Notes under the pieces: generated by a model
Database searches by the model: none
What the model was told of the DNA's origin: nothing
The model's input: the letters and a program-made list of their open reading frames with translations, nothing else
Assembly (NCBI RefSeq): GCF_040938485.1
Contig: NW_027270907.1
Span: forward strand, 2,356,001 to 2,420,000
Direction: 5' to 3'
DNA length: 64,000 bases
Source of the DNA: Diadema antillarum
Lineage: Eukaryota
Made by a program: the position numbers and the translations under genes
Part shown: piece by piece, positions 6,568 through 47,607 of the stretch
Numbering within the stretch: the first letter of the stretch is position 1
Layout: every line of letters starts with the position of its first letter

Positions 6568-6613
<46 letters not shown>

Positions 6614-8386: not shown

Positions 8387-8440
<54 letters not shown>

Positions 8441-20900: not shown

Positions 20901-23900
20901 TGACATAAATGGACTTGCTAGTAGATGGTGTCTGTATCTCATTACTGCTGCAAGAAACACTGTCGTCTCTGCTCATTAAAAGGGCAGCCTAGAGGAGATG
21001 AAAGAACAGTTTGTGAGATAAAGTTCAAACACTATCTTTGCATAAATCCAGATAAGACTTTGATGAACATGAATGTGGTAATGACAAAAGTGACTGAGAA
21101 TTATAATGCTATAAAACCAGAAGTTTTTGTGAATAACAGCCGACAACTTTTTTTGCTCAATGAATTTTGCACAAATTGCCACTTGCGTTCAATGCCTGAA
21201 GTGTAGACAAGAACTTTCATGTATATTTCAATTTTGCGAATCTTGGCTCCACGCGAAATTTGCAAAACTTTCGTGCAGACAAACATTTCTGGTTTTGCAG
21301 TCATGTAGCTCTTGTTTCTTAGTAGCTTTCCACCACACTGTGGCATGTAAACTGCTTTACAGCGTATCATTATACGAGTCCCTGGAATATAAAACCAACA
21401 TTTACTTAGCACTTATTCTACTTGATGGGGAGTATTCCAGCTAGGCATCAGTTTACAGCACACACATAACAGCAAACTACCTTGTCATTCAGTTTTATAT
21501 CAGGTACCCAATTGTACATTTAGGTATAGAGGAACATTGTACATGAAGTGTTGCAGTAAGGCTCAAATCCTCAATGTTTCTGTTGAAGGTCAGTGTGCAT
21601 CCACCAGAACATTACACCTCTACCATGGACCTTTGAAACATTAATCTTGTGGACTGTGACCCATTCCTTAAGATACCAACAGTCCAAAGAATGACCAGTC
21701 AACTATCTTACTAGCAGCATCCTGCTAAGTTCTTCACTTAATATCATGTGATATCATTTGAAGTTCACAAATCTGTAAAGCTCATCCCACCTCCCAATTC
21801 CACGAACTGGTCATGGACATTGACTACCATATAAGAGGTTTGTTCTCTGCAATATACCAATAACTTGATATGATGGAATATGCATCAGGGCCGGCGGAGC
21901 GTTTTCAAAAGTGGGGGGCCCACTTCCGGGTTTCATGAGCTAACAAGCAAAAAAATGTGTACTTTCGGGTTAAAAAAAGTGGGGGGCCCGAAGTGATGAC
22001 ACCTTATGTATTTCTTTGTATGGTGCCCAAAAAGTGGGGGGGGGGGGGGGTGCCCCCCCCCCCCCTTTTGGTTCCGCCAGCCATGTGCATATATTGTATA
22101 CTGTAATCTAATGTATACTGTAATCTAATGAAATTTTATTGTTTTTCACCTTGTTCTTTGCATTTTGATGAGAATTTGGAAATAAATGAAATAAAATGAA
22201 ACTAACTGGTATATAGTCCAGCAATTAGAAAATCAGACTTCAAACCCATTCCAACATCTGTTCAAGCCTTTCTAATTACAGTTACAGTCTAAGATGATTC
22301 CTAAGTGCTAGGATGTAGCACTGTACCTGCACTGCAGCCCCTGTTGCAATGACCTCTTCCGGTGATATTGAGTTGAGCAGCTCAGCGTCAGGAAACATAT
22401 CTCTTAGCTGACTTTGAAGTTTTGGAATGCGAGTTGAGCCTCCTGTAATAATTACCTATCATTGTCAGTAGATAGGCAAAAAACACAAAGTAAAAAAAAA
22501 TTATATATAATTACATGTACACGACATAATACCCCTATCTGATCAATGATATTTAGGATGACACCTTCTGTGATTTCAAGCCTCACTGATTGTCATCATT
22601 CAGAATACCTGCACCTCAATGAAATGCAAGACATAATTAAAAAAAAAAAAGAAGAAGAGAGAATAGTTTTGGCCAGGATTGCAGATATTGTTTTTCATTG
22701 TCATAATAGTGTTCATTACACTTACAGAGACATGTGTAAATGGGAAAAGAGAAGTATGTACAGAAATGTGCAGCTCAAGATACTTCATACCTGCCAAAAG
22801 TCATATTTAGAACAACAAATGCTGTATCATTTGCTGAATGCTTGGGTTTTACACGGCCTAGGGACTTATTGTCTTGTAAACAACTGTGCATAATAACAAT
22901 TTGAATATCATTTCCTCATATACAGTCCTACCATTATTTCCTTGGATTACAGTACTAGTCATCACCCTGTATTAAAGAAGACTCTGCAAATCAAGAAGCT
23001 GCCATATCTGGGAGCTGTATACACTGTGTTCAATGGCAAATGCAGAAATAAAAGCTACACATTTAGATAAATACATGTGATTGCCTTGGAACAACCCTTA
23101 TGTGATTCAGCATTGCCATCTTTACTGAAATGTAATAACTGGAATTCAACTTCCAAGAGATTGCTGATCTAAATAGTTACAGTGTATTATTGTTTGGACC
23201 AAACTAAGGTAAATATGATTGGTCATGTTACCTTGTGTATATCACTTGAAGATAAGCCAGTTTCTTGAAGAGTAGCTAGTATTAAGTGTAGACATCTCTG
23301 GAGAGGTACATTAACCACCGATTCAAATTTAGCCCTGCAAGGAATCATATAGGTACAAAGGTATTTCTGAAAGATTGTTACACATTTACACTTTTCAAAA
23401 ATATTGACTGATGGGTGATTCATGGACCAATTCCTACTGGCAGACTGATGGGCAGATTTGGTGTTTCAGTATACATTGTATAAATCACCCATTACTAAAA
23501 TCTAAGCTCTCTCTTTCAAGGGTTATATAGGAAACAAATATTGACTGCTTTGATGGACATGGTTAAAACTATCTGCCCAGTGGTAACTTCTAAATAGTGC
23601 TATGCCCCAAGAAAGTAACACTGTCAAGAAATAACACTGCAGAGAAATCATCGAGGACAAATAGTTTTAATCGTGACCTGAGAAAAAGCAGTTAATATTT
23701 GTTTCATATACCGCATCCCTCTTAATTTGAGATACTTAGCAAAATAATGCTACGTGAAGGCATTGAAATGAAGTTGTCGTGCTACCAGTTAGAGAAATTA
23801 CACACAGCATCATTTCACAATGGGCAGTTAGATACATGTGTATGATACTTATACGTTTGCAAGATATACTTATGCACATCTTGAAAAACTACTAGCTGAC

Positions 23901-25369
23901 TACTGGGCAGTAAAGCCGAAACTATTTACTGCACCTTGGACCAATCAGAATCGAGGACTCATCAAATGGGGTACATAATAGTCAACATACAATCATATAG
24001 AGGAATTTAGGCACTGAAAGTCTTAATGCAGTTTGATGCTAGTATTCAAGAGGCTCATAAATGACAGTATACAATTTCACACACTTGCTTCATTAATCTG
24101 TGGCCATCACAGAAAAGTACTCACAGATTAACGGTTGGTTATACATCGTGTCACTAAAAATAGCCTGGAGCAGTGCATATGATTCAGAGCATCAGTTTGG
24201 AGGGAACATAATCTTTTCTTGTTGTAAAAATCCCATATACATGGAATGGGAATAAGAGTTTAGTAAAAAATGAATTTCCTGGTGAAAGTACAATCGATGA
24301 TACATACGCTTATTGGGTATCCATCTTACCTAGTTATGTTGCTATGGAAATCAATGCCCTCGTACAGTGAGTCCACTGAGATGTGTGAAGTATTGATGGT
24401 GGAGAGTACATGCTTGCACGTCTCACATGCATTGTACAGCTTCCCCATGGCTCTCTTGTTTTCACTGACATCCATTTTATACTGTCTAGAATTGAATACA
24501 AGGACAAGACAAAAATAGGTCATGGTATATTTGTCACAGCATTTGATGTAGGCAAGGTTAGGTCTGTTGAAAGAAATCATTTCTGCTGGAACTTTACTCT
24601 GATTCTTCTATACATGGGGCAATTTCATTGGACCGACCATGTGGCAATTATGTGTACGTTTTATAAATTTGGGATCATGAAGTACTGGTAGACTACTAGT
24701 AACTCACACCTTCATAGAAAATTTTTTAAAACCAAATTTATATAAATTCAAATTTATCATAAATACCACATTGGTCACTCAGACAAACATATTGGAATCT
24801 TTCTTGTTAAACTAATCAACCCTAAAAAGACGGGGGGGGGGGGGGGGGGGATCATGACCCTCCGGAAATTTTGCTATAATGTCCAGAATGCATAAGATCT
24901 AACCCTGACACATCATGACTTTTTTCTTTAGAGTCTTACACATCTTTTGACACCTAATTTGCATATATACCTGCAGCGGTTATGGTGTTACGTAACATTT
25001 TATGGTCACATGTCCGTCAAAAATGGCATATTTGTATATGTTTATGTGTAAAATTAATGAGGTTTTGCAAGATTCTAATGTGTTACATTTGTTTTTCTTG
25101 CACAGTCTGTTTTTCAGCTATTAAAATCTGATCTGAAGTTGAAATTAATTGTTCTGAGTACAAAAAACATAAAACAATAGAAAACATATAAAATAAAAAA
25201 AATAATTAACATAATAGTCTGGTACATATAACAAGTATAATTGTTAAATTAATTACGTAATTTTTACTCTTAGACAATCAGTTTTCTTACAAATACATGT
25301 TAAACAACTTCCTTTCACATATTTCACAATTAAGGGATCACTAGACGACCATTACTGGCACAAAATAAA

Positions 25370-25426
<57 letters not shown>

Positions 25427-28400
25427 CCATAAAAATTAGCATATTTGCATAAGTAATCAGCCTTAATTAGAAATTTATTGGAATTTTTGTAAAATTAACT
25501 ACCGAGTATGCCTTCTTGTAGGGTACATCATAAACTAGGTGCATGCCAAATATGGTCCATGGCTGAGATCTGGGGAGGTAATCATTGCCCCACCCCCATC
25601 CTCAAAACCTCCAAAATAGCTCAGTCTTTTTAGGGTTAACCCTATTCTAATGGTGGGGGGGGGTCAAATTGACCCCCCCCTTGACGTTTCGCGCCACGAT
25701 TTCGCAACGCGCAAAGCTTCTGCCGCGTCGTTTCATGACTTTTTTCATTGAAATCTTCCGCATATTTTGAGACCAAATTTGCGGCGTCCGGGTACACCGT
25801 TTTGAAGTTACGTAATGTTTTGCATATGCATGTCAACCAAAAAACAGCTCAAATTCTTGATATCGTGTGCAAATCCAATGCAAATTGCGTTTTTTGGTTA
25901 AATTGATATAAATTAGATTATTTCAACTTTTAACCATTGAATTTAATCAATTCTAGTGTAGATAAGCCTGACAAAGTGCCTGCAACAAGTTTTGGCAAAA
26001 AAAAAGTAGAAAAAAAAAAGGTTGAAAAAACAATAAAATACATAAGAAATTAACAAAACAATAAAAAACAAAAGAAATTAATTTCAATTGAGCTACTTTT
26101 TTAAACAAAAATTGTTTGATGTGTCTTGAGGAATTCTGGCACAAAAATTTAGCAATCCTCCAGTCTTTTTAATGGAGTTATAGGTGAAAATATGATTTCA
26201 TGCACAAATCTGCATAATTAATTTATCAAAAATAGAAAGGCAATATTTTTCTATTGTGTGACAATGTAATCTTGTAGTTGACATCCAGCTCTATCTTCAG
26301 GCAAAATTTCGCGGCAATCGCGCGATCGGCGGCCGAGATCTGAAGGGGGGGTCAAATTGACTGACCCCCCCTCAGTAAAAACTTGGTCTCAAATAGCCCA
26401 GTTAGAATAGGGTTAAAGGTACAAGAAAAATGCACGCAGACTAAAGAACAGCGCATCACTGTGTGCATATGATGGTAAGCATGAACAAAAGCATCAACCA
26501 TGCTGTTCATGTGAATGTTGATGTTTAGATGCATTTCCTCCATAGATCAAAAGGTGGGGATTATGATCAAGTGTGAGAGATGGTACATGTCTCATAACTG
26601 TGTGCAAGGATCTATTTTATTTCCCAGAAAATGTTGTGCTGCATGATGACATATTAGTAAGAGGATCCCCCTCCACCAAAAAAGTTAAAGTGTTGCATGT
26701 GCATTGATATAGGAATTACATATTGGCACATACTGATTATCACAACCATGATGGTTTTTGTTTATGATCTTTCATTTTATCAAATGCAGTCGTCATTATA
26801 TGAACAGTAAAGCTTCTAATAATTCCTGTTTGGCTTTTGAATCAGAATCATTATTCTCAACTACATCAGAACAATTTCCCTAGTAGCAATACAAGCAATA
26901 TCAAATTTGTGCTCCTAGTTAACATGAAAAATGTGATGTATATCATTCCATACCTCTTGAATTCCTGAACACACAAGTTTGAAAGGGCGCTGGTAATGTC
27001 ATCTCCTCCACACTCATGATGTGTCTTTGAGGCCTCAATCCTGTAGAGGCCATTTGTCACATTGACAACTGACACACTCACTGTGCTGCCTCCAAGTCTG
27101 TACACTAGCACATTACTGGAAAGAACCACAAAACCAACATCTGGGTAAGCTGACAAATGCTGTAACAGCACATCTAAAAGGTCAAAAAAAGGTATGGCCC
27201 AGCTCACAACGACATGCATTATGTCAACCACAATAATATTTTTAACCTCCAAACTATAACTATGTAATCATGACTATGCATCCAGATTTCAAACAAATAG
27301 AACACCACTGACATATATCATCATTGAACATTTACAAACACTTGTGTTTCTGAAGATGAGTGAACTAAATCACTCCTTCATCTAGAATAATTGATGGCAC
27401 TACAGTCCAAACTCTCTAATCCGGACATGTGGGGACCGGGGCTCATCTGCATGAGGGATTTGGTTGGATATGGGAGACTTAATGTTTGATACATGCAGCT
27501 GCCTACCCAATGGTAGCTACATGTTACTTATTGCAGGTAGCATATACTCATACTCTTTCTTTGCTACAAGTGCAAAATTATAGGCATTTCTCTTTTTTTT
27601 TTTTTTATAAAATGAAAATAAATTTGTTGTCAAATAATATGTAATTCATGAGAGCTTGTGTAGGATTTTTTTTAAAGTTTAAAATCCCCCCTTTTCCTGT
27701 AATTATTAGATTGAAAAAAAAAAAGAAGCAAACAAACAAACAATCATGGTAAGATTGCATCCGGATAATAGAGAGATCCGGATAAAGGGAGGCCAGATAA
27801 GAGAGGTTGGACTGTACTTCTGTTAATGACAGGTGATATAGGCATACCATGGATCATGAAGCTTTGTAACCCCGATGCTGTAAGCTAGAGCTGCTGCAGA
27901 AGGCTCACTGATTAAGCGTAAGACATCAAATCCTGCCACTTCTGCTGCTTTCCTGCCAAACAAAGAAAAAATACCACATAATTATCAAATATTGCTACAT
28001 TTCTTTACATGTATTTCTCAACTACCCACAATGATAAGAACTTCCAGGAACATTAGCAAATTGGATGATTTCTTGTGCTCATTTCTATCACTCTCAATGA
28101 AACTGAAACAAAAGAATATATTGTCTGCAGCTGTCACGCCAGTTTCACACAAAAGCATGAGATATCTGTTGTTTCACTGTTTCATTTGGCACTGCAGATT
28201 TATATCAACATTGATGTGCAGGGTGGTATATGAGGGAGTTATGCATAATATCGTAATGCCTTGCCAACGATTTCGTTGAACATTAACGTGGTGTCACCGA
28301 AAAAAAAAAAAAATGACATCACATAGACAATAGAAAACTTGCCAAAGAGCCAAATGTGTCCATTAAATTCTAGAAAACATAGCTCAAGATCTATTCTTAG

Positions 28401-31400
28401 ATCATAGCTCCTTTACTGATAACCATTCAAGAATATTCCATTAAGGATAAGGTCCATCTCAAACTCAAGAGAATCCTAGGTCCTTGAGAGGGTGCTGGAC
28501 CCCAGCTGCACGAGACTTTGCAATTCATACTTGTGATGCCTGTGGTGCATACAATTTCAAGATCTCTTTCCAGTCATCGTGCTTAAATTTGCAAGTTGTG
28601 GACTACACTGGACATGTGTCATAGCGTGTATGAACAATAATGAACAATACTGCTATAACTCGACAGAAAGAACAGCTGGTATTTAGGCTCTAATGATTTT
28701 TTAGAAAGCTGTATTTAGTTTAATAATATATCCTCTGCTATCAGTTGGGATTTTGTCATAATTTCTACATATATGGGAATTTATCAACAAAAAAGATAAG
28801 CTTAGAAGCAGACATTCGTACACAGAAAGGGGCATGGTAAAGAAAGGCAGCTTCACTACAGTGCACACACCTACAGCAGGTAAACAGGAGATATCCTTAT
28901 TAAAGAGGAAATCCACCCCCAAAATAAATAAACTTTTAAAAAAAAGAAAAAAAAAATTCCCTACAAAGTGTTCCAAAAATGACAAAAATCAGATAAGAAG
29001 TAAGGAAGATATGACATTTTGAAATTTCACATTTCTTAAGAAAACATTTCTTGACCAGTCCATATTCAAATGAGTGAGTTGATGATGTCACACCGTCACA
29101 ATTTTTCATGTACATCATACATGAAATTCTGACAAATTTTCATTTCCATCTAATACAGGTACAAACATATTCCCATACCAAAATATATCGGAGTGAACAT
29201 TTCTTTTTAATTTGGGTGGTATTTATAAGGCTGAAATATAAGATTTTTTGTAATTTCATATAATGAAACGAATAGGAAAATGTGAGTACATGACAGCATC
29301 AACTTGCTGATTTAAATATTCATAACGACTGCTCAAGAAGGGTTTTCCAAAGAAATTTACAAAAAATTCAAAATGTCTTATTTCTTATTCAATTTTGATC
29401 ATGTTGCACTGTTCTGCAGGGATTTTTTTTTCGCTTTCTTATGAAATTGATACAATTTTGGAGTGGATATCTTCTTTAGGTCAACTAATCATTGATACCC
29501 ACCTTACTGCATCCCTTTGTTGGCCTGAGAAATCAGCTGGTACTGTTAGGACCGCACTCTTTACACTTTTGCCTCCCCCATGCTCTGCAATTTCTGTTCA
29601 TGATAGATATGACAATACACTGTTAATGCCATCTAATTAAAAAAGAATATAAAAAGCTTTAAGGAAAACGTGACTGAGTTCCCATCACATGTAGCAATAA
29701 CTAAACTGTCTGATTTTTCTTAAGTTTAATCAGCTCTTTGTTTTTGCAGTAGCATTGCATAATAATCTTACATCTGTGGGTAGCTAAAAAATAGCTTTGT
29801 GGCTCAGATTCAGAAATTTCACAGTTTAAAACAAGTTTGAAATATGACTAGTGTGAACAGAATCTCATTATAAATGTGAAAAAAAAATGCAATACAGAAA
29901 ACTGTACATTTTGTCTTTGAACGATCAGCTGCTTGGCTGAATTGAAATTTGAAGTTTGTTTGCATTGGTAATATAGACAGAATTCACAGTTGGAAATCTG
30001 ATACAAAATACAAAACAAACGTTGCAAAGAAAGAATAGGATGTTAATCACTTTAGAAATTACTGTTATACATGTATAATTAAGTCATGGAAAAACAAGTT
30101 TTGTTTTTGTTTTGTTTTTAACTATAGGATTATATTGGTTGTGGACCCAGTGTACATGTACTTTAATACAATCAAGATTATTCTATTGACATGCAAATGC
30201 AAACAAGAATGAACCTTTCAATTTCTTAAAGATGAGGACAGCAACTTCCAGAGAAGAGATGAGTATCTTCTTGTTGTTAAGTTCCACCTCAAAGCCTGCC
30301 AGGCCCTGTTTGTCTACCACTCTGAATGCAGATCTCTTCTTCACAGCTAGGACCACTTGATCTTCAAAAGACCTTCCTAACAGGTGTTTGACATGCATCA
30401 CAGTGTTTACCGGGTTGCGCAGTCTTCCTTGCTTTGCAGCTAGCCCTACAACCTGTCAAACAAAGTCCAAGAAATAATCACCAATGCAAAAATCTTGGAA
30501 TCATTTTTGTAGTGCCTCAAGCAAAGAGATTTCCATCTTGATGATCCCAGAGATGCAGTCAAAAAGTATTGTAATCATGTCTCTCCATCTTTCACATGTG
30601 GGTTAGTTTCAAAAGGTTACTCCTTATTCAGGGAGTGAAAGTCAAAGATTCTTACAACTGCATTTCAGCTTTGTGATTTACTTACTATTTTCAATTTAGT
30701 GGTCTTCATATTGCCAGATATCGCACAGTTATTCAAGGACTGACACTACCACCAGCTCCAGCAAGGACAAGTGCTTATCTAAATCCCAAAATTTATCAGG
30801 ACCCCATTGCACAAAAGATGCAATCAAACATTAAGTCAGAAAATCAAACTACAGTGCAAGTCAAATATCAGCCAATTCATAACATGTTGCACCACAGACA
30901 AGGTGCCTTGAGGTACCCGGTATCTGTCGTTAGTCCCTGGGGTCAGCAAAGGTCATTCATTGTTCCCAATGAGCAGAGTGAAGAAGAGTGGATAAGTAGA
31001 GGGAATGTATTTGAAAAAAAAAAATATCCAAATTGGTTTCTTTGCATTTTTGCTTTTCGGACAATGATCAATCCATGCAGTATACATGTACTGTATGTCA
31101 GTGCACAGCATATCAAACCATTAAAACTCCGGTAGCAGATCGACACAACATACCTTGTCATTGTCACTGAAGGCTACCACGTTTGGAGTAGTTCTGTCAC
31201 CTGCATCATTGGCCAAAACTTCAGTTTTTTCATCCTGCCATAACAAAGTGCAAAACACATTAGGAGCCGAAATGATAATCGAAAGTATGGTGGCTACTTC
31301 CTCAGTATAGTGTCATCAGTTATGTGTAACCTGGCACATACATGATGTACTCATAGAGGAATAGAGAAGAAAGAAAAATAAAACCACACCTTAACACTGT

Positions 31401-34400
31401 GAAGGGGAATGACACCCCTCCAACTCCATGATGCAGCTAGTTTGTTTGGTGGTGTGTACCACTGTATCTTCGTTCTTATTTGGTCCCAAAATATCATCGG
31501 TCCAATGTCCTACACAGCTACAGCACTAAAATGTACCCACACCACTGGCCATCACACTAAGCAATAAGATGTCATACATATACATCTTATTCTTGCCACC
31601 TCTGTGCGGGCGTGGCTGCTGGCCATTGATCGTGAAAGCAGAACCAAACTTCTGCCCTTTGGATAGAATGTACTTAGTAAGATTTTCTCTGAGAAACTCA
31701 CAGTTAAAGAGACAAAAGTTTGAGACAAGACCCCCCCCCCCCCAAAAAAAAAAAAAAAATATATATATCTGAAATGAAAAATCATATAAAAAATGAGAAA
31801 AGACAATTAAAGCAAAGTGAAAAGCACTGAAAGAAAAAGTGGTCTAAAATGTATGGTCAATTTAGTGATTTTCATCATACATGTAGATCATGTAGCTGTA
31901 TGCATGTACTGTATAGATCTATGCAGTCAACCTTTCTTTCCAGCAATGGCTACATCTACACAGTCATACACGACCCTGGGGTGCTCTATTCCTACAGTTG
32001 TGGAGTTGTACTGAGGGAGCACCCTGAGAGTGAACAGCATGCTACATTGTACATGTATCTTTGTACAATGAGAGAGAGAGAGAGAGAAAGGAAAAAAAAA
32101 AAAAAGAATTTCATAAATTCAGGAACTTAAAAGTGCACCATGTGTCTCTATCAACAGGGCACTGTGCCCTGTTGCATAAAACCCTTACCGCTGGACTTAC
32201 TGCTCCTTTCTAGCGGGAAGTCTTCAAATTAGCGGTAAATTTTATAATCCTTGATGCTGATTGGCTGCACCGACATGATGCCTAATTTTGACGGTAGTTA
32301 CCATTGAAATTCAATGGTAAGTTTTATGCAACGGGCCCCTCAGAAATTCTGGATCTATCTAGACACGGTACCCAGTCGTCTACAGTCTACGGCGGCTTTT
32401 GCTAAACAGTCGAGTCGCAGGTGTGGCGCAGCGCGGCTCACTGGGGCTAATTTAGCTCCAAAATGCTGTATGGTGTCTTCAGGAAGACACATTGAAAAGA
32501 GCCCATATTCATTACCGGCTTGCAACGAATGTACGCCATGCATCAAAACATTGCTTGGGCAAAATGCTTTTGGTGAAAGATGATTTAAGCCTTTCAAAGA
32601 ATCGGAGATTAGAAAGGAATGGCGCAAAAGTACACAAGTGCCGAATTCACGAATAATGCATTTATTGGCATTTAGATTAAGGTAAAGATCACAAATAAAA
32701 TGGGGATCCTTGTTTAAGCAATGCCACAAAGATGTGTTGTGTCACAAATGAAGATCCAAGCTCCATTACAATTAATGAATGACTCTAGGCCTATCTGTTA
32801 TGGAGATATTATGTTTTTACCCTCAGGTTAGATAGGTCTACATGTAAAAATCATGATTCAAAGCGGACAGAGGGGCTATTCATTATACACATTGCATCCA
32901 AAAATGTTGATTCCTTATACTTATTCATAATCTTTATTTTCTGACATTCTTAATTTTTATTTTTTGGCTTCAATGACTTTTCTGCTTTTCTATTCGTATG
33001 CTCGTACTCAATATAGTCTCTCCATTCACTTCCTTATAGGTTTTTTGGCAACTCAAATATTTCTTTTGCTATGGAACTTAGCATTAGTTTAGCATTTTTA
33101 TGCATGCTCCAGTCAATGAAGCACCGGCGTGCAATTTTGTACAACATAGTAAATTATACAGTGTTCGCTGATCACACTTAAGTTTACAGTTCAAGATTCT
33201 CACCAAATCAGATTGTGACTCTCTTCAAAATGACCTAAATGAACTGGCAGCATGGTCCAAACGCTGGCTGCTTGACTTTAATGCTGAGATATGTGTTGTT
33301 TACGCATACGTGCATCTTTAGATTGCCAGTACTCCCTTAATGGCAATTACCTACAAGAAGTGACGAGCCAAAAAGATTTGGGTGTTACTGTATAGTGTAG
33401 TGAAACCAGCATTGGAATATGCATCCACAGTTTGGAGTCCATTTACAAAGAAAGACATAGTAGCTTTGGAGAAGGTGCAGACAAGATGCCTACGTTTATG
33501 TAGCATCAAACTCAGACTGGAACCTCTTCAGTTGAGAAGAATCAAGACCGATCTTACAGATACCTACAAGCTTCTAAATGGCCATTATAAAACCAAGCCA
33601 GATATTTTCTTCTCTAACCCACCCAAAACACTAAGAGGCGACTCTTACAAGCTGTATCACAGACGCTACAAAACCCAACTTGCTGGCCACTTCTACTCCA
33701 ATAGAGTGCTCAAGCCATGGAACTCCCTCCCAGATTAGAGCATGTTGTGTCTGCATCTACTGTGGCATCCTTCAAGAGTAGACTGATGAGAGCCCTTCCC
33801 ACAGGAATAGAGGGCTAATCAACCAAGTATCCAAGTATCCAATCCAAGTAAATGTCTTGGGAAATAACCAACACTAAATTGCTGTAATGTCTCTCTTGCC
33901 CTTGTGCTATAAGCTGCCTCTATTCTTTGTTATCATCTGATATTGAACATGAGTTTTAATGTCAGAAAATGAATCATTGAATACAAAAAGTCATTCTTCG
34001 AATTCATTTTCAATCACTTGGCATCCACAATCTGTAGTGTGACTGTGTGGATGTATAGCTCTTCAGCTCTTTTTTCTTTTTCTTTTCTAGCTGTTAATCT
34101 CTACTTGTCCATCATTCTTCGTCATTCTTATCTGATTTTGATTCTGATTTCAGTTCCCCTTCAGTTCTATAAATCTAACATTATTTCTATCCTCTCTCCC
34201 TGTCAATTCTTGTTTTTCTTCACATTATTCTAATTTCTATCATGTTCTCTCTTATTTCTGTCAAATTATTTGTCATGTTATGTGTGATATATCCTCTCAT
34301 TTATTTCTCATTGTAAATTTATACTTTGATTGGTTTCATTCTGTGATATCAATACTCCTTTTTGATGTGTCCCATTAGATGAAGACACCATGCACCATGC

Positions 34401-35301
34401 ACCAAACAGCTTTTTGGGCTAATTTCGCTTCAGCAAGCTGCGCTGTGCCACGCCCACAACCTAACTACTATTAAGCGGCATGTATAGTAGGTCTAGTCTA
34501 GATGTCAAACACATCGACACCAGGGCTGCCAACTCTCACGCATTGAGCGTGAGACTCATTTTTGGTCCTTTCTCACTCTAAAAGTACACTTTATTTCATT
34601 TCCATGCATTTCTATTGATCTCACTCATTTTGACTCCTAAACCCTAAATTATAGCATTGGCCTACTGAAGTCTCACTCTCAACTAGTTTCCAGTGTTGGC
34701 AGTCCTGCGACACTGTACATTTTTAAAACCAACACCCCTCTAAGCTCTATTTATATCATTGGGTGTAAAAGAACAAACTTTCACACATGAGACCACACGC
34801 AGCAGTGTTCTTGCATTCTTCACTTGTTGTGGATTTGAATAAAAATTAGATGCCCAAATTATCATTTATAGGTCTGTAGTCTACCCCAACAAACAAAAAC
34901 AAAACAAACAAAACATTAGAGTGTCGATTTGTTGAACACCCAACTACATGTCCTGTACGATTTAAACTAGTGTCTGGAATCTACACATTGCACACTTTAC
35001 AATTTAATGAAGTACATTTTACAGTGTTACCAGTGCAATACCAGCTGTACCGGTTGTAAATATTACAACTACAAGTACACAAAATTAGATACGTGGGACT
35101 AACAATGTACTAAACACGTGCGAAGCATTGCATGACTAGCTCGGTTCTATTTTTTCCAGTCCATACGAAAATAACGCAAACTAGCTAGAATCTCCATGTT
35201 TATAAATGACTAATAAAGCCAGTATTTGATAAATCACTTACTTTGTTTATTGCTACACAAGACGTTGTACCACCAAAGTATACTCCGATGGAGGCTGCCA
35301 T
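17903..35301 (-). CDS. HSPA14: Heat shock 70 kDa protein 14 (Hsp70L1, ribosome-associated complex subunit)
   Basis: 13 exons (high-low): 35301-35242, 31234-31154, 30452-30215, 29593-29503, 27952-27848, 27115-26954, 24485-24330, 23334-23232, 22455-22327, 20988-20899, 19272-19099, 18931-18861, 18011-17903. All are GT-AG; 1569 nt = 522 aa + stop. Diagnostic sequence: [99 protein letters not shown]. Confidence 0.95.
18066..18247. mobile_element. Tc1/mariner-like MITE (TA TSD)
   Basis: TIR-like ends tacgggcaactcctgttataacaaa and tttgttataacaggagcgccctgta, flanked by TA. Confidence 0.6.
18500..18694. mobile_element. Tc1/mariner-like MITE, same family as 44739-44923
   Basis: cagccaacctc...gcaaggttgactg(ta). 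The left portion resembles cagtcaaccttgcttaagtcgatcttgca at 44739. Confidence 0.55.
19825..20882 (+). mobile_element. Non-autonomous PIF/Harbinger transposon with a decayed MADF/Myb-like ORF
   Basis: Perfect 15-bp TIR AGCCCCCGTTCCACT, TAA TSD at 19822-19824 and 20883-20885, and many subterminal AGCGT/ATCGG repeats. 20286-20396 encodes [35 protein letters not shown] with one frameshift. Confidence 0.88.
21886..22085 (+). mobile_element. hAT-like MITE with 5-bp TSD (copy 2)
   Basis: Termini CAGGGCCGGCGGA...TCCGCCAGCCATG, flanked by TGCAT at 21881-21885 and 22086-22090. Confidence 0.75.
24820..25635. mobile_element. piggyBac-like non-autonomous element A
   Basis: 12-bp TIR CCCTAAAAAGAC. Left flank TCAA (24816-24819), right flank TTAA (25636-25639). 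Confidence 0.7.
25640..26412. mobile_element. piggyBac-like non-autonomous element B
   Basis: 11-bp TIR CCCTATTCTAA, with TTAA at 25636-25639 and 26413-26416. The interior is related, in reverse orientation, to 47608-48330. Confidence 0.78.
27403..27814. mobile_element. Tc1/mariner (pogo/Tigger-like) MITE, copy 1
   Basis: TA-cagtccaaactctctaatccgg ... gataagagaggttggactg-TA. It is an inverted copy of 42676-43119. Confidence 0.75.
28904..29475. mobile_element. Kolobok-like non-autonomous element
   Basis: TTAA-agaggaaatccac ... gtggatatcttct-TTAG: imperfect TIR with a degenerate right TSD. Confidence 0.65.
33155..33850 (+). mobile_element. CR1-clade LINE 3' fragment (decayed, internally deleted)
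   Basis: Degenerate FAD.TKVY...LQNDL...W..RWLLDFN, then [37 protein letters not shown] (ORF 33382-33738). It ends in a short (ccaagtat)n tail. Confidence 0.85.
34521..34707. mobile_element. hAT-like MITE with 6-bp TSD
   Basis: TIR CAGGGCTGCCAAC / GTTGGCAGTCCTG (12/13 match), with CGACAC at 34515-34520 and 34708-34713. Confidence 0.75.
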
Positions 35302-35691
35302 TTTGTTGGCCTAATGACCTACGCTACGATTAACGCGATTACGTCATGCAAATTTGCCCAATCAGTTAGCGACAAATGTATGACAAAGTTGTCCACGTGT
35401 AGTAGTTTGAGATCGTACACACTAGAAACCGGTAGGTAGCCTACTACTACATGTACTACTAGATTGGTGTGTGTAAATCCGCTTGGTTGCCTTTTAGCTG
35501 AGTGACTGACATCGACGATGTACACATCACATTGAAATCTGTGGATGAGTATGAGTTGGAGACCAAAATTTCTCCACGTCTGTTATGAACCGACTCGTGC
35601 TGCTGCTGCTGTAGATTTGCTGACTTGCCGACTTCAATCATTTTGTTTATAGTGTATTCGTTAGCCACCACTCAAAACAAAGTGAGAAAAG
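35302..35691. promoter_or_regulatory. Putative bidirectional promoter and 5'UTRs shared by HSPA14 and MANF
   Basis: The divergent ATGs are 390 bp apart. The interval is CpG-rich and contains TTACGTCA (35339-35346, ATF/CRE-like), CCAAT (35358-35362), CCACGTG (35393-35399) and ATTGG (35463-35467). A YY1/TISU-like CAAAATGGCAGC overlaps the HSPA14 ATG. Confidence 0.7.
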
Positions 35692-38600
35692 ATGCAGATT
35701 TCATCAAATTTATTCATGTGCCCGGCGCTAATTCTGCTCCTATCAGTCGTGATACAATGTTTGACACTGACAGAAGCAAAGCTAAAGGAAGGTGAATGTG
35801 AAGGTAAGACTATTAGAGTATTAAAACGAGAGTGGCAGTGCAGTGGGGTGTATAGTAAATTAGCTAAATTCCTAACAGTGTAACACGTTAATCATGCTAA
35901 TCTCTGATATCTGATCTCTGTGCGAGTACTTTAGTTGCTGGCCAATTAGGTCCAGGGGAAATACTAGTACTAAGTAGTAGTATAATACTAAATTATTATG
36001 TTCAATGACATTGATGCAATTGTATGAATGATCAGTTCTCCCTATCGCATATAGCTCTCCGAATCTGAACACGTGTGGCGCTCTAATTTTTTAACCTTTT
36101 GGCTTTAATTCTTGGGATATAAACTTCCGGTTATGAAGGCGCGATGTGTAAATGTACGCTTTTATGCACATTGAACGCCGAAGTACTAGTATTCACAGTT
36201 CGTTTTAAATTCTGTCGAATAAAAATAGAGTTATTTTGTAATCTGTAACTTTACTCTGAATGGGATTCTTCCGCAAAGTGGCCCCATGAATGCTGGGCCG
36301 ATGATGCAAAACAACGAAATTATGGAAAATATCTAACAGGTTATAGATGAAGGACGTGACGTGGGTACACTGTAAACCGCAAAACCGGAAGTTTACGTCC
36401 CAAGAGCGATCGGTCAGATATCGGTATCGCATGGTGATATCACTTGATTTCGGCTATATGCGATAGGGAGAATTTCCTCTTCTTTTAAGTTTGGTTGGCA
36501 AGGTTGGTGCTATATTGAACTAACAGTTCGTAGAAGTTTAAAGTTTATTTAAAGTTTTTTATCCATGTCGATCTCAAAGCGTGACAAAGGCACCAGACTA
36601 ACGTTAGAAGTTAGAAGTTCACCGCTGTCTCAAAACTCACAGACCCAAACTATCTCTTCTAGTAATGTAGGCCCTAGCCCCTACGTACATTAGTCAGCGT
36701 TAGTAGACAAGAGTATAGCCTAAAACAATTGTTAAATTGAGAATACAAGACTATAAAGTCTACAGCAAAATCTGAGGATATAATGTTGTCCGCCCATAAT
36801 TATAATGCAACCATATTAAACGCCATCCAAAATTTCGATTGGCAACAACCTCACATGTAAAAAACTTTTTTTTTTTAATTTTATAGATGACAACAGAAAT
36901 ATAAAGAAACATCTGAAATCCTAGCCAATTATCATTCTGAAAGGGAGTGTTTCAAGCATTTGTAATATGGTTTGGCACTTGAGTGGGGGGGGGGGGGGGG
37001 GGGGGGCAGGCCTTTGACTGACACAGCATTTATTGGCTGACATTAAATGTTTCATGTTCAGGTTTCTTGATTGTTCAAGAGACACAAGCATGTCAACCCG
37101 TGTACCGGTATTTCTTTTTTCCGTGTCAAAGCCAACTGATATACATTTTATCTTCATTTCAAATACTGTGCTTCCATTTTTTTTTATTCACTTTTTGTTA
37201 GTCATCACTGATTCATTAAAGATAATTGTTTGTCTTGTAAAATAATGTTGAACTAAAACAAGAAAAGTATCAACAGATCTGTGCAAAAGCAGTACAGATA
37301 CCCCAGTATGTGACATCCAGTACACTGTATCTTCAAGACAGGACTTCAGGTGTACTTTCATGTTGTCGTTTTTTTTTATCTCCATCAGAACAAAAAAGTA
37401 TGTTAGATTATTTTAGTGTGTTTTATTTCAATCCTCAAATTATAACAACTAAGCATGCCTCATACTTGCATGTATTTTCGTTTTGTCTCTAGTGTGCCTG
37501 AGTGTAGTGCAGCAGTTGGAAAACATGATCACAGATGAGGACAGAAAAGATACAGCTGTCATCGAAAAGAAGATCAGAAAATTCTGCAAGGGAGCCAAAG
37601 GGAAAGAGAACAGATTTGTAAGTATCACTCAGGTTTGACTTCAGTATTGTTTGAGATACTGTACATTTTGTCACATTCAAATTGCCTTGAAGTGATGAAA
37701 TAATTGGTAATGTATAGAAATGCAGATCATCAGGTGTATGCATAACAACATCATGCACATCACCCCTTACTAAATTGTTAAAGGCAGTTGTTGAGGGGGA
37801 AATGTGTACAATGTACGTAATCATTCAATATTTGAGTTTTATCTCTTCACAATTTGATGGCATAACACAGAAAAAACAACAGGCTTGTAAAAGTGTTTAT
37901 TGATCTCTTTTTTCCCTCTCTTTCTTTTCTTTTCTCAACAAGAATACAATGTAGATTATTTACCTGCTGCACTGATGATCGTAAGTTGAGATGACCAGAG
38001 AATATGTTTTAATGTTGTCATTTTTCACTTGACTAAAATTGTATGTCCTGTTCCATGTACATTTTGTATTTCTGTAGTGTTACTACATGGGAGGCACGGA
38101 AGATGCTGCAACTGGGATGCTCAATGATCTGATAAAACCTCTGTCTGTCCCTCTGCCTGCCGATAGGATATGTAAGAAGCTCAATGCTAAAGACAGCCAG
38201 ATATGTGAGCTGAAATATGGTGAGTTTTGCTCCCAAATGGGAATAGATCAATGTAGTAATTCCTAGTATCAATGATGATAAGGTAAGGCTACAGATGTAT
38301 TTCCCTTTGAGGAAAATTCAAAGGGCCTTACTCTTGTCCTTGCAATTTAGTATGGTAGTTGTTAACATGTACAGCTGAAATAGAATAATTAAAAGGTTAT
38401 TCTTAAAGCAAAGTAAATCCAAAACAAAGAAACAAACACATGCAAAGGGTCTTTTGTCCTTGCTATTTAGTATGGTATTTGTTAACAGCTGTAATAGAAT
38501 AATTGCAAGGATAATATTTTAGATTTTAAAGCAAAGTAAATCTAAAGCAAAGAAAAAAAAAACATAAGAACACTCGTCCAAATTATATGAACATTATTGA

Positions 38601-40631
38601 TTAAGCACTTGAGATATAAAGATCCAGACATATAACTTTGCTGCTGTTTTACATATCAGTATGAATATCATTGTAAAAGAATATCAAACTACTCAGAGAC
38701 TCCAACTCTCCAGTTTTCGACGGGAGATCTCCCGCCGAAAACCCATTTTTGCAAAATCTCCCGTTCTCCCGCTGGAGATTTGATTCCTCCCGCCCTGGCT
38801 CTGTGTCTCCCGGTGGAAAGGATTTCTTACTTATTGATATCGTATGTTGAAAAATAAGCCTTAGATAGCACCAGAGAACATCTAGAACCCTAGGAACTTC
38901 GCGCTTCGCACACATCAACTTGGAGTCTCCCGTTTGCTAGGGGTTTCGGGCGGGAGAATCTCCAGATCAGAAGGTGCTTGGGGTTGGAGTCTCTGACTAC
39001 TTGTGTGGTTTTACAACACTATATCACAGGTTTAAAAGCTACAATGAAGTATTTGTGCAAAAACACACAGAAAATGTATTCATGTGAAGAGATTTGTTCT
39101 GAATGATGGAATGTGCATCTTTTGACATATTATTGATATGATGGAGTGGCAAACTGAAATGGCATTTTGATAATATTCTGAAGACCCATATAAATTGAAT
39201 ATACCAACATGGATACTAAAAGTGTGCCTCATGGATGTTTTCAACGACAGTGCCTCATGCATTGTATGTCTGCAGGTGACTCCCATTAAAACAAAGTCCT
39301 TGGGAGTGGCAGTGAAGTATACACTGTATAAATATATATAGATGATAAATGTGGGACCTGCTCTTTTACACGTTACTTCATTTCATGAGAATTTTGTTGC
39401 AACTGACTGACATTGAGAATTTTGTTATAACCATGTTTGTTAAAGGACAAGCTCACCTTCATAGACATGTGGGTCGAGTGAATGCAGCAATATTAGTAGA
39501 ATACATCAGTGAGAGTTTGAGGAAAATCCGACAATCCGTTCAAAAGTTATGAATTTTTAAAGTTTCTGTTCAGTCATGGCTGGATGAGAAGACTACTATA
39601 GCTTGTGATGTCACATGAGTACAACGGTATAAAGAAAGTATAATGAAAATTCACCTTATTTTCACTTTTCTCGCATAACAAAAGAACACTTGACTTCTCT
39701 CTTTCAGAAGACAAGGGGAATAATATTATCCATAACATACATCAGTAACAAGTCCAAGAAATGTGCACTTTATTCAAAAAGTAACATTTTGTGAAATTCT
39801 CTTTTTGTTTTCATTATATTGTTGTACGCATGTGACATCACACACTGTAGTAGTCTTCTCATCCAGCAGTAATTGCGCAGATACTTAAAAAATTAATAAC
39901 TTTTTAACAGATTATCGGATTTTCCTCAAACTTTCAGTGATGTGTTCTGCTAATATTGTTGCATTCACTCAATCCAAATGTACATGAAGGTGAAATTGTC
40001 CTTTAAAACAGGAGTGTGCTGCATTTTTATTCAACCCATGAAAGAAAATGGAAGAAAGCTTAGTTTGAAGTTGAGGACAAAATGATATGACAATGTCTAT
40101 TCAAGTAATTATACAATCATTCATGCGTGTACAAGAAAGCTGATTTTCCAATGTCATTCTTACATTTCTTCTTCCTATATGTAATTATCTATTTATTTGA
40201 ATAAAATGTTATTTTATGTATTCCTTTATTTGTTGTTGACATTGCTTCTGCCACTGCAAAATGTGTTATCAAACAAAATATTCCAAGCCGGTGATTGTAC
40301 TACTGTAGTGCAGTGTTTTTGCTATATTTGCTATTCATCATTGAATGGTTGGAATAGCTGATACATTCTGACTTGTTCTATAACTTAAAGCAATACTAAC
40401 ATGTTTTCTTCTGTTCGTCTTCTCTCTCTCTCTCTCTCTCTCTCTGTCACAGAAAAACAAATTGATTTGGATGCAGTAGATCTGAAGAAACTGAAAGTAA
40501 AGGACTTGAAGAAGATTTTGACTGACTGGGGAGAGAGTTGCAAATCCTGCTTAGAGAAGAACGATTTCATCGAAAAGATAGAAGAACTGAAGCCAAAGTA
40601 CTTCAGAAAGCAGCAAAAGCAGGAATTATAA
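35692..40631 (+). CDS. MANF: MANF/CDNF (ARMET) family ER-stress protein
   Basis: Exons 35692-35803, 37493-37617, 38078-38219, 40453-40631; 558 nt = 185 aa + stop. Signal peptide, then [71 protein letters not shown](CXXC)LEK.DFI, and a C-terminal KQEL. Confidence 0.96.
36036..36472. repeat. Inverted-repeat-bounded element in MANF intron 1
   Basis: Perfect 20-bp inverted repeat ttctccctatcgcatatagc (36036-36055 / 36453-36472), plus an inner inverted pair aaacttccggtt (36121-36132 / 36383-36394). No clear TSD. Confidence 0.7.
38694..38995. mobile_element. hAT-like MITE with 6-bp TSD
   Basis: Perfect 13-bp TIR CAGAGACTCCAAC, with ACTACT at 38688-38693 and 38996-39001. Confidence 0.8.
39444..40002. 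mobile_element. Kolobok-like non-autonomous element
   Basis: TTAA at 39440-39443 and 40003-40006. TIR AGGACAA(GC/TT)TCACCTTCAT, 17/19 match. Confidence 0.8.
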
Positions 40632-45876: not shown

Positions 45877-46818
45877 TCATAAAGCAACAGATGGTAATGT
45901 AACATTTTTGCTTTCAAATGCAACCAGAGAACACTGTTTGAATGCTTGAATTCGCTCTTTGATTTCTTCTTTCCACTGCAAAATTACCTCATTTAGACTT
46001 GATGACAAACATTCTGGAGCACTGAATGAGTAAACAACATGCTCTTTTTTCTGCATGATACAAGTGTTGCTTGGGTGCTCATTTTTTATGGATGGAAAGC
46101 TTTCAAACGTAAAATTGCATATGCACTTGTGAACACATAATGGAGTGTAGGAGAGACAGTTTCCATGGACATCCACTTCATACCAATACAGTACAGGATA
46201 GCCCAACAGTAAACCAAACACTGTCGTGAGATTCCATTCACTACATGAGAGATTCACCACATCTCCAGAATCTCTTTCAACCTGAAACACAACATCCCTT
46301 GCAGCCAGAGCAAAGTTTGAAATATCCTCTTGGCTCGCTATCTTTGGCTTCTCTAATGCCCCAGTAACATCCACCAGAAGTGCAGAGAACTGAGATGTTC
46401 GACATGTTGATACATCAACAGTGTCGTAGTTGTCACTATCCATCACATTGTTGACTGGAGTTAATGTAGTCAAGAACTTCCTTATATTCTTCAACAGCAA
46501 TAGTCTGTTAACAAATATAATGTCATCATGCAATATCAAAGTAATGTACTGTGTCCCTTGCACAACACTGCTATCTTCTGCAACTTCACTTTGTTGTGCT
46601 TGTACAAGTGGAGAAGGTTTCTCAACATTTACACAACATAATGGTTTGACGATATCGCTTGCAAATCTTTGCAAAGATTCTGGTTTACATGGAGGATAGT
46701 CATATAAAAAAGCTGGCTTGACTCCACCTATAACACTAGAAATGTCACACACTATTTCTTTCCAATGTTTGCTAGCTGCTCTTCCAAGATAACTTCTTGT
46801 TGCCGATTGTAAGTTCAT
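45877..46818 (-). CDS. C1orf74: UPF0739 protein C1orf74 homolog (DUF4504), single coding exon, 313 aa
   Basis: Uninterrupted ORF with the family motifs GVKPAFLYD, WNLTTVFGLLLGYPVLY, NCLSYTPL, VYSFSAPE and C-terminal VTLPSVAL. Confidence 0.9.
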   Translation of the reverse strand: MNLQSATRSYLGRAASKHWKEIVCDISSVIGGVKPAFLYDYPPCKPESLQRFASDIVKPLCCVNVEKPSPLVQAQQSEVAEDSSVVQGTQYITLILHDDIIFVNRLLLLKNIRKFLTTLTPVNNVMDSDNYDTVDVSTCRTSQFSALLVDVTGALEKPKIASQEDISNFALAARDVVFQVERDSGDVVNLSCSEWNLTTVFGLLLGYPVLYWYEVDVHGNCLSYTPLCVHKCICNFTFESFPSIKNEHPSNTCIMQKKEHVVYSFSAPECLSSSLNEVILQWKEEIKERIQAFKQCSLVAFESKNVTLPSVAL

Positions 46819-47607
46819 TATGTATCATTCACCAGATCATTCTGTTTCAACTTGGAAAACACTGTAAATCCTGCATGTGCACTTCCAACTCTCAGCAGAC
46901 GAGCCCAACGTCAGTGAGTGGCGATTGTGATAACCTCCGAATTTGTCAAGCACTTTTCGATTGAGCTGACGAGCTGACGCAGCAGGGATCTAAATGTACA
47001 TCACATTAATTGTATCTACCTTGCACTTGCAGTGCAGTGCCAGAATGTGCTTCACTATGTTCCAAACAAGCTGCCCTTTCTTGTTGGGCTCTTGCCTGTA
47101 ACATACAAAGTGTAGTGGTTCATGCGGATGGAGTGAAGACTTGGATTCTGATCCTATAGGCCTACAGCTCAATGAACATTAGCCCGACCAGATGTCATGC
47201 AAGTACAGACGTGTTTGATGTGTAGAGGCACTCGAGGCAGGGGTGTAAACCTGTGTAAAGTTAATTGAACATAAACCTGTTTAAAGGGATGGTATAGGTT
47301 GTTTTTTTTCAAATGATAGAATGTATTGATTTCTCGAAGCAACATAATTATACAGAGGATGGATGAAATACAAAATTATTACTTCAACACAAAGCCATTT
47401 CTTTGGTACAAACAATATAAACACTTATCTATGTTTTTCATGTTTTTCTTTCAGATATTTAAATAACTCCTTACTAACAAACATACTATAAAGGGTCATA
47501 CATGTGAGGATACCCACTAATGCAAACATGACTTTATATACCCAACCAAAAATGGTTTGGCAGGGACCTCCAAAAACAACTGATTATGACAGCCCTCCTC
47601 CGTAGTG

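What the first reader, a model, noticed from the sequence alone, without database searches (positions are those of the whole stretch)
35242..35803. HSPA14 and MANF/CDNF are head-to-head, the same pairing as human HSPA14-CDNF
Seen: the HSPA14 ATG (35301, minus) and the MANF-family ATG (35692, plus) diverge from a 390-bp interval, so they almost certainly share a promoter. Established: human CDNF and HSPA14 are immediately adjacent and divergent on 10p13, human MANF lies elsewhere (3p21), and invertebrates generally have one MANF/CDNF gene. Inference: the pair predates the vertebrate duplication and has been kept since at least the deuterostome ancestor, and CDNF rather than MANF retains the ancestral HSPA14 linkage. 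This points to an ancient co-regulated proteostasis module coupling the cytosolic ribosome-associated chaperone with an ER-lumen UPR regulator. I am not aware of this being described, but could not search.
Basis: partly seen in the sequence, partly recalled or inferred. Interest (0 to 1): 0.72.

Follow-up and report, generated by a model that had tools for sequence, protein, structure and literature searches.

The report
Old HSPA14–MANF head-to-head gene pair
In this sea-urchin (Diadema) DNA, an HSPA14-type Hsp70 chaperone gene and the ER-stress factor gene MANF start 390 bases apart and point away from each other, as scallop MANF and mammalian CDNF also do, so the pair is old; but many other animals have broken it, and it is an ordinary example of a known kind of conserved neighbour pair.

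Summary
A minus-strand Hsp70-family gene starts at ATG 35301. A plus-strand MANF/CDNF gene starts at ATG 35692. The interval between them is 390 bp. The MANF model equals NCBI's 185-aa 'MANF homolog [Diadema antillarum]', so the window is Diadema or a near-identical urchin.

I surveyed ten other genomes.
- **Same arrangement:** a 507-509-aa Hsp70 gene lies head-to-head with MANF in the scallop Pecten maximus (ATG to ATG 305 bp) and with CDNF in a marmot (461 bp). First-intron positions are identical in all three species.
- **Arrangement absent:** a crinoid, two hemichordates, a damselfly, a coral, a sponge, and salmon MANF.

It has been lost repeatedly. After the vertebrate duplication it survived beside CDNF only.

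A shared promoter is plausible. The interval is short, has undepleted CpG, no consensus TATA motif in the MANF-sense orientation, and a CCAATCA box that all three species share.

The 'co-regulated proteostasis module' has no support. No ERSE, UPRE or HSE consensus is present, and the pair was broken right at the promoter in two ambulacrarian lineages.

No paper describing the pairing was found. It is a new member of a known kind, the conserved 5'-5' microsyntenic pair, and of modest interest.

The parts
17903..35301 (-). HSPA14-type Hsp70 gene, coding span. Exon pieces lie near 35242-35301, 31154-31234, 30216-30455, 29502-29597, 27862-27951, 26950-27117, 24329-24475, 23229-23330, 22321-22455, 19096-19287 and 17906-18040, with the stop at 17903-17905. 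Boundaries other than exons 1 and 2 are approximate, and some small exons were not located.
   Evidence: Pfam HSP70 hits run in order along the profile. Exon peptides are read from stop-to-stop frames. tblastn hits are collinear with the Hsp70 genes next to scallop MANF and marmot CDNF. The C-terminal exon has no match to any PDB Hsp70.
35242..35301 (-). HSPA14-type exon 1: 20 codons, ATG at 35301, donor GTAAGT
   Evidence: The same first-exon end (…K|gt) is seen in Pecten and Marmota.
35302..35691 (.). 390-bp divergent interval, the putative shared promoter. It holds a CCAATCA box at 35358, CCACGT at 35393 and 35574, and TTACGTCA at about 35339. CpG o/e is 0.97.
35692..35803 (+). MANF exon 1: signal peptide up to …GECE, ending in phase 1
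   Evidence: Identical to the N-terminus of P0162. The intron position is the same in Pecten MANF and Marmota CDNF.
37493..37617 (+). MANF exon 2
   Evidence: ARMET_N hit, splice sites, identical to P0162.
38078..38219 (+). MANF exon 3
   Evidence: ARMET_N at 72.6 bits, PDB MANF 6ha7/2w51 at E 9e-16, splice sites.
40453..40631 (+). MANF exon 4: SAP-like C-domain with CKSC, ending in KQEL and a stop
   Evidence: ARMET_C at 82 bits, splice site, identical to P0162.
45880..46824 (-). DUF4504 gene, tail-to-tail with MANF. Part of a separate three-gene block conserved across ambulacrarians.
   Evidence: Pfam DUF4504 at 1.7e-27. The same neighbour, in the same orientation, is found in Saccoglossus, Ptychodera and Antedon.

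Best explanation
This is a real and old head-to-head gene pair. In a Diadema sea urchin, an HSPA14-type (short, divergent) Hsp70 gene and the single-copy MANF/CDNF pro-orthologue have start codons 390 bp apart on opposite strands. The same arrangement occurs in a scallop (305 bp) and at mammalian CDNF (461 bp). It is therefore most simply inherited from the bilaterian ancestor.

Shown: the gene identities, the orientation, the spacing, the shared first-intron positions, and the presence or absence of the pair in ten other genomes.

Inferred: both genes are transcribed divergently from one compact promoter region that is CpG-undepleted and carries a CCAAT box. I also infer that the pair persists mainly passively. 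A 300-460-bp interval full of promoter elements is a small and costly target for rearrangement. The pair survives in slowly rearranging lineages and has been lost several times (crinoid, hemichordates, an insect). After the vertebrate duplication an HSPA14 copy survived only beside CDNF. A specific functional coupling of the two chaperone systems is not needed to explain the data.
For: Scallop locus L002 has a 507-aa HSP70 gene on the minus strand ending 305 bp from the MANF ATG. Marmot locus L005 has a 509-aa HSP70 gene 461 bp from the CDNF ATG. Window Hsp70 exon peptides hit collinearly in L002 and L005, with no significant Hsp70-exon hit (E < 0.1) in any other fetched locus. Exon 3 is 68% identical to the marmot gene over 31 aa. 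It is about 48% identical to the best PDB Hsp70 over the same stretch, by my count from the alignment. First exons end at the same codon in all three species for both genes. Vertebrate MANF and CDNF form a clade with 98/94 support, with CDNF on a long branch. Salmon MANF has no Hsp70 neighbour. Interval CpG o/e is 0.97 against 0.55 for the whole window, and 1.32 and 0.82 in the scallop and marmot intervals. CCAATCA lies on the MANF-sense strand in all three intervals. Papers give the mouse order Cdnf-Hspa14-Suv39h2 (PMC5774710) and list cdnf and hspa14 next to each other among the genes of one sole BAC (PMC6579814). Conserved 5'-5' pairs with intergenic distances under 1 kb are a described class (PMC3514665).
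Against: Only three positive lineages were found. The pair is absent in Antedon, Saccoglossus, Ptychodera, Ischnura, Porites and Corticium, so several independent losses are required. No amphioxus, tunicate, lamprey, annelid or second mollusc family was sampled. The HSPA14 assignment rests on exon-level similarity, neighbour product lengths and synteny, because no full-length search was made. The shared-motif test is weak: for the 7-mer, 15% of shuffles did as well.
Confidence: 0.72

Rival explanations
1. The pair is held together by selection because the ribosome-associated Hsp70 and the ER-lumen UPR factor must be co-regulated from one stress-responsive bidirectional promoter.
For: The pair is retained with very tight spacing in three phyla. 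The Diadema interval has two CCACGT boxes against 0.06 expected from window density, plus a CRE-like TTACGTCA. CACGT cores also occur in the scallop and marmot intervals. Both products act in protein folding (general knowledge).
Against: No ERSE, ERSE-II, UPRE or HSE consensus is in the interval. In the crinoid and in hemichordates the block MANF-DUF4504-large gene is intact, but the break lies immediately upstream of MANF, that is, at the shared promoter. In vertebrates only CDNF kept the link; MANF, which from my knowledge is the classic UPR-induced paralogue, did not. Coral and sponge MANF are head-to-head at 400 bp or less with unrelated genes. This suggests a generic compact promoter rather than a specific partnership. 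No expression data were obtained.
Confidence: 0.1
2. Convergence. The head-to-head arrangement arose independently in echinoids, pectinid bivalves and vertebrates.
For: The pair is absent in six of the nine lineages sampled. That includes every other ambulacrarian examined, an insect, a coral and a sponge.
Against: The chance that one given gene becomes the immediate divergent neighbour of another given gene is of the order of 1 in 10^4 per lineage, and three independent events would be needed. Spacing is similar in all three (305-461 bp), and both genes keep identical first-intron positions. The upstream neighbours in the lineages lacking the pair differ from one another (MFS transporter, TBK1-like kinase), as expected for independent breaks.
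Confidence: 0.05
3. The two genes are adjacent but use separate core promoters within or outside the interval, with no shared regulation. On this view the adjacency is pure historical linkage.
For: 390 bp is enough for two independent core promoters. On my inference from upstream ATGs, the HSPA14 TSS lies within about 45 nt of its ATG and the MANF TSS within about 105 nt of its ATG. That would leave at least 240 bp between the two TSSs.
Against: Both lie in one continuous zone of undepleted CpG, 35000-36700. Pairs with under 1 kb between starts generally behave as bidirectional promoters (PMC3514665, PMC2688522).
Confidence: 0.13

Closest known systems
Mammalian CDNF-HSPA14 divergent pair (human 10p13; mouse Cdnf-Hspa14-Suv39h2)
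   Same: The same two gene families in the same 5'-5' orientation, a few hundred bp between start codons (marmot 461 bp), and the same first-intron positions.
   Different: Here the partner is the unduplicated MANF/CDNF pro-orthologue, which is closer in sequence to vertebrate MANF (63%) than to CDNF (54-56%). The downstream neighbour of HSPA14 is an amidase-like gene rather than SUV39H2.
Conserved ancestral microsyntenic pairs (CAMPs) of Irimia et al. 2012 (PMC3514665), e.g. HSPD1-HSPE1
   Same: A 5'-5' orientation conserved across phyla, an intergenic distance under 1 kb, and chaperone genes in the textbook example.
   Different: HSPD1-HSPE1 products form one physical machine and the pair is kept in almost all species. 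HSPA14 and MANF work in different compartments, and the pair was lost in most lineages sampled here. I could not check whether it is in the CAMP list, because no supplements are held.
NF-Y/CCAAT-dependent bidirectional promoters (e.g. Mrps12-Sarsm, PMC1802594)
   Same: A short interval with a CCAAT box and no consensus TATA motif in the MANF-sense orientation.
   Different: NF-Y dependence is not tested here. Only one CCAATCA box is shared among the three species, and the statistics are weak.

Membership tests
MANF/CDNF (ARMET) family | N-terminal saposin-like ARMET_N domain and C-terminal SAP-like ARMET_C domain | tested here: met
   Pfam ARMET_N at 34 and 72.6 bits and ARMET_C at 82 bits. 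PDB MANF and CDNF match at E about 1e-15.
MANF/CDNF (ARMET) family | Signal peptide, eight conserved cysteines including a C-terminal CXXC, and a KDEL-like C-terminus | tested here: met
   Read from P0162, which equals the window exons. It has a hydrophobic N-terminus, eight Cys after …TEA, a CKSC motif, and ends in KQEL. That these features define the family is from my own knowledge.
MANF/CDNF (ARMET) family | Pro-orthologue of both vertebrate paralogues, i.e. outside the vertebrate MANF+CDNF clade | tested here: met
   Vertebrate MANF+CDNF clade has 98/94 support and the echinoderm clade 97/98.
HSPA14 (Hsp70L1) subfamily of Hsp70 | Hsp70 nucleotide-binding domain | tested here: met
   Five of seven exon pieces tested (pieces 2, 3, 4, 5 and 7) hit PF00012 in order, positions 15-373.
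HSPA14 (Hsp70L1) subfamily of Hsp70 | Short protein of about 509 aa with a divergent, truncated substrate-binding part and no EEVD end | tested here: inconclusive
   The C-terminal exon 19096-19287 matches no PDB Hsp70 at E<=1. The last exon ends …QVKKE. Exon lengths add up to roughly 500 aa, but the exons were not joined and some small ones were not located.
HSPA14 (Hsp70L1) subfamily of Hsp70 | Orthology to the vertebrate gene next to CDNF | tested here: met
   Exons 1-3 are collinear with the 509-aa Hsp70 gene next to marmot CDNF at 45%, 59% and 68% identity. The best PDB Hsp70 reaches about 48% on the same stretch of exon 3, by my count from the alignment. The first-intron position is shared. 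No full-length reciprocal search was made.
Conserved 5'-5' microsyntenic pair (CAMP sense, PMC3514665) | Adjacency of orthologues in distant animal lineages with conserved orientation | tested here: met
   Found in an echinoid (the window), a bivalve and a mammal, all 5'-5'. Absent in six other lineages.
Conserved 5'-5' microsyntenic pair (CAMP sense, PMC3514665) | Correlated expression of the two genes | not tested
   No RNA run could be laid.
Bidirectional promoter | Less than 1 kb between the two starts, CpG-rich, usually TATA-less | tested here: met
   ATG to ATG is 390 bp. CpG o/e is 0.97 against a window value of 0.55. One TATAWA match lies on the minus strand only, and a CCAAT box is present.
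Bidirectional promoter | Divergent transcription starts mapped inside the shared interval | not testable with these tools
No listed run is on record as RNA.

The most novel reading that the evidence does not exclude
In the lineages that kept it, the HSPA14-MANF/CDNF pair is maintained by selection. One NF-Y/ACGT-core bidirectional promoter would co-tune co-translational folding capacity (the ribosome-associated complex) with ER-lumen proteostasis (MANF). Its survival at CDNF would then reflect an unrecognised regulatory link between CDNF and cytosolic translation quality control.
Probability: 0.1. Interest if true: 0.6.

Novelty: new member of a known kind. Interest (0 to 1): 0.3.

Why it matters
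The result dates the CDNF-HSPA14 neighbourhood of mammals to at least the bilaterian ancestor. It shows that CDNF, the faster-evolving paralogue, sits in the ancestral genomic context. That is useful when assigning orthology in the MANF/CDNF family and when reconstructing the 2R history of this region. It also gives a clean natural experiment: species with and without the linkage can be compared for MANF and HSPA14 regulation. It does not by itself reveal a new mechanism. Conserved divergent pairs with sub-kilobase promoters are a described class.

Tried and rejected
- **Contig look-ups that found nothing.** The DUF4504 ORF and Montipora MANF are not on record. P0003 is only an RNA contig without neighbours.
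- **Naming the Hsp70 gene as HSPA14.** The Atlas gave only generic 'Hsp70 domain' clusters or nothing. PDB holds no close relative. The word search with the 90-aa exon piece found nothing.
- **Stress-element scans.** ERSE, ERSE-II, UPRE, HSE and AARE all gave no match in the interval.
- **Shared k-mer test among the three intervals.** Only CCAATCA is shared at k=7, and 15% of shuffles did as well. I do not claim a conserved regulatory code.
- **Literature.** No paper links CDNF or ARMETL1 with HSPA14 beyond gene lists. The supplements of Irimia 2012 are not held.
- **Artefact considered and rejected.** Three independent assemblies show the same arrangement, and NCBI's protein equals my exon model.
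Full report
**1. What is in the sequence**

The window is animal DNA with spliced genes, about 38% G+C and no N.

On the minus strand an ATG at 35301 opens a 20-codon exon, [20 protein letters not shown]. It ends at 35242 on a GTAAGT donor, and an in-frame stop lies three codons upstream. Further minus-strand exon pieces run down to 17906. They hit Pfam HSP70 in order along the profile, positions 15 to 373.

On the plus strand an ATG at 35692 opens a 112-nt exon that ends at 35803 on GAAG|GTAAGA. Three further exons follow with canonical splice sites: 37493-37617, 38078-38219 and 40453-40631. They hit ARMET_N and ARMET_C and match solved MANF and CDNF structures at E about 1e-15. The four exons total 185 codons.

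Read one after another, they are letter for letter the protein P0162, 'mesencephalic astrocyte-derived neurotrophic factor homolog [Diadema antillarum]'. The word search returned this protein. So the window comes from Diadema antillarum or a near-identical urchin, and the MANF model is independently annotated.

The two start codons are separated by exactly 390 bp, 35302-35691.

**2. Is the Hsp70 gene HSPA14?**

- No solved structure is close. The best PDB Hsp70s reach only 30-36 bits over the 80-aa exon 3.
- The C-terminal exon 19096-19287 matches no PDB chain at all. This fits a divergent substrate-binding part.
- The window's exon peptides align collinearly with the 509-aa Hsp70-family gene that lies next to marmot CDNF. 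Exon 1 is 45% identical, exon 2 is 59%, and the first 31 residues of exon 3 are 68%. The best PDB Hsp70 reaches about 48% on that last stretch, by my count from the alignment.
- They also align collinearly with seven exons of the 507-aa Hsp70 gene next to scallop MANF.
- Mouse gene order is Cdnf-Hspa14-Suv39h2 (PMC5774710), so the marmot gene is HSPA14.
- In all three species the first coding exon ends after the same lysine, at codon 19 or 20.

I therefore accept 'HSPA14-type'. There is one caveat. Attempts to get a name from exon pieces failed.

**3. Survey of other genomes**

The exhaustive protein search with MANF exon 4 and two word searches gave named MANF and CDNF proteins. I looked up their genomic places with 10-kb flanks.

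| Species (locus) | Upstream neighbour of MANF/CDNF | Downstream |
|---|---|---|
| Pecten maximus, scallop (L002) | 507-aa HSP70 gene, minus strand, ATG to ATG 305 bp | Peptidase_M20 gene |
| Marmota, CDNF (L005) | 509-aa HSP70 gene, minus strand, ATG to ATG 461 bp | none called |
| Saccoglossus (L003) | MFS transporter, same strand | DUF4504, minus strand |
| Ptychodera (L006) | MFS transporter, same strand | DUF4504, minus strand |
| Antedon, crinoid (L011) | TBK1-like kinase, same strand | DUF4504, minus strand |
| Ischnura, damselfly (L007) | unrelated gene 7.8 kb away | none called |
| Porites, coral (L009, L010) | 531-aa non-Hsp70 gene, head-to-head at 400 bp | ion-channel gene |
| Corticium, sponge (L004) | 653-aa gene with no Pfam hit, head-to-head at 179 bp | kinase gene |
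| Salmo, MANF (L008) | none called | RRM+SPOC gene |

tblastn with the window's Hsp70 exon peptides finds no significant hit (E < 0.1) in any of the loci that lack the pair.

The MANF first exon ends at the same place (…C-E, phase 1) in Diadema, Pecten and marmot CDNF.

A maximum-likelihood tree puts vertebrate MANF and CDNF in one clade (98/94), with CDNF on a long branch. All echinoderm sequences form another clade (97/98). The Diadema protein is 63% identical to salmon MANF and 54-56% identical to CDNFs.

**4. Reading of the distribution**

Three phyla share the same two genes, in the same orientation, at 305-461 bp, with the same intron positions. Independent origin would need three events, each with a prior of roughly 1 in 10^4. 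Loss by rearrangement is common. The lineages that lack the pair have different upstream neighbours, as independent breaks predict.

The pair is therefore most likely ancestral to protostomes plus deuterostomes. I found no sign of it in a coral or a sponge.

The linkage is not strongly held, however. Within Ambulacraria only the echinoid has it. The block MANF(+)-DUF4504(-)-large gene(+) is intact in the crinoid and in both hemichordates. So in those lineages the break fell immediately upstream of MANF, in or at the shared interval.

**5. How it probably works**

- The interval has CpG o/e of 0.97, against 0.55 for the window. It sits in a zone of undepleted CpG from about 35000 to 36700.
- The scallop and marmot intervals are likewise CpG-rich, at 1.32 and 0.82.
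- There is no consensus TATA motif in the MANF-sense orientation.
- A CCAATCA box lies on the MANF-sense strand 57 bp from the HSPA14 ATG. The same heptamer in the same orientation lies at 77 bp in the scallop and 151 bp in the marmot.
- That sharing is only suggestive. It is the only shared 7-mer, and 15% of dinucleotide shuffles share one too. The count of shared 6-mers is exceeded in 4% of shuffles.
- The Diadema interval also has two CCACGT boxes (0.06 expected from window density) and a CRE-like TTACGTCA.
- No ERSE, ERSE-II, UPRE or HSE consensus is present.

My inference is that both genes use one compact, housekeeping-type, CCAAT-containing bidirectional promoter region. From the positions of upstream ATGs, both have short 5' UTRs. 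This step is inferred, not shown.

**6. The 'proteostasis module'**

Nothing found here supports a specific functional coupling.
- The pair was broken at the promoter in two ambulacrarian lineages and is absent in the insect.
- Coral and sponge MANF share equally tight divergent intervals with unrelated genes.
- Vertebrate MANF itself is unlinked.

Passive persistence of a tightly packed divergent pair explains the data. I give the module idea about 10%.

**7. Comparison with what is known, and novelty**

Irimia et al. 2012 (PMC3514665) described several hundred conserved ancestral microsyntenic pairs. These are enriched for the 5'-5' orientation and for intergenic distances under 1 kb, and HSPD1-HSPE1 is the chaperone example. 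The present pair fits that class.

Full-text searches found CDNF and HSPA14 together only in gene lists. No paper discusses the pairing, its orientation or its age. The Irimia supplements are not held, so I cannot exclude that the pair is already in their table.

Verdict: a real, correctly observed, old gene pair; a new member of a known kind; of modest interest.

Noticed in passing
window 35692-63374; L003, L006, L011: A three-gene block, MANF(+), DUF4504(-) and a large gene of about 2700-2800 aa without Pfam domains (+), is conserved in order and orientation in Diadema, the crinoid Antedon and the hemichordates Ptychodera and Saccoglossus. Window exons at 52620-63374 are collinear with the large gene by tblastx. 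Among ambulacrarians this linkage is more persistent than HSPA14-MANF.
   Followed up: partly
L003 1-10001, L006 1-10001, L011 1-10001: Where the HSPA14 linkage is missing in ambulacrarians, the break lies directly upstream of MANF. The new neighbours differ: an MFS transporter in both hemichordates and a TBK1-like kinase in the crinoid. That pattern fits two independent breaks at the old shared promoter.
   Followed up: partly
L009 2847-10001; L004 1-10001: Coral (Porites) and sponge (Corticium) MANF are also head-to-head, but with unrelated genes, at 400 bp and 179 bp. MANF seems to sit habitually at compact divergent promoters.
   Followed up: no
window 36000-36600: A second peak of undepleted CpG (o/e about 1.3) lies inside MANF intron 1, about 300-900 bp downstream of exon 1. 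It could be part of the same unmethylated island or an intronic regulatory element.
   Followed up: no
window 58551-60986 (+): An uninterrupted 812-aa reading frame with a reverse-transcriptase domain (RVT_1, E 3e-32). It is a LINE-type retroelement lying inside an intron of the large gene. A short LINE-like fragment also sits in HSPA14 intron 1 at about 33382-33738.
   Followed up: partly
window 1880-10547 (+): Exons of an amidase-family gene (Pfam Amidase, E up to 4.5e-25), tail-to-tail with the HSPA14-type gene. This is not the SUV39H2 neighbour seen in mammals.
   Followed up: partly
window 40420-40446: A (TC)n run of about 26 bases forms the polypyrimidine tract just before the acceptor of MANF exon 4.
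   Followed up: no
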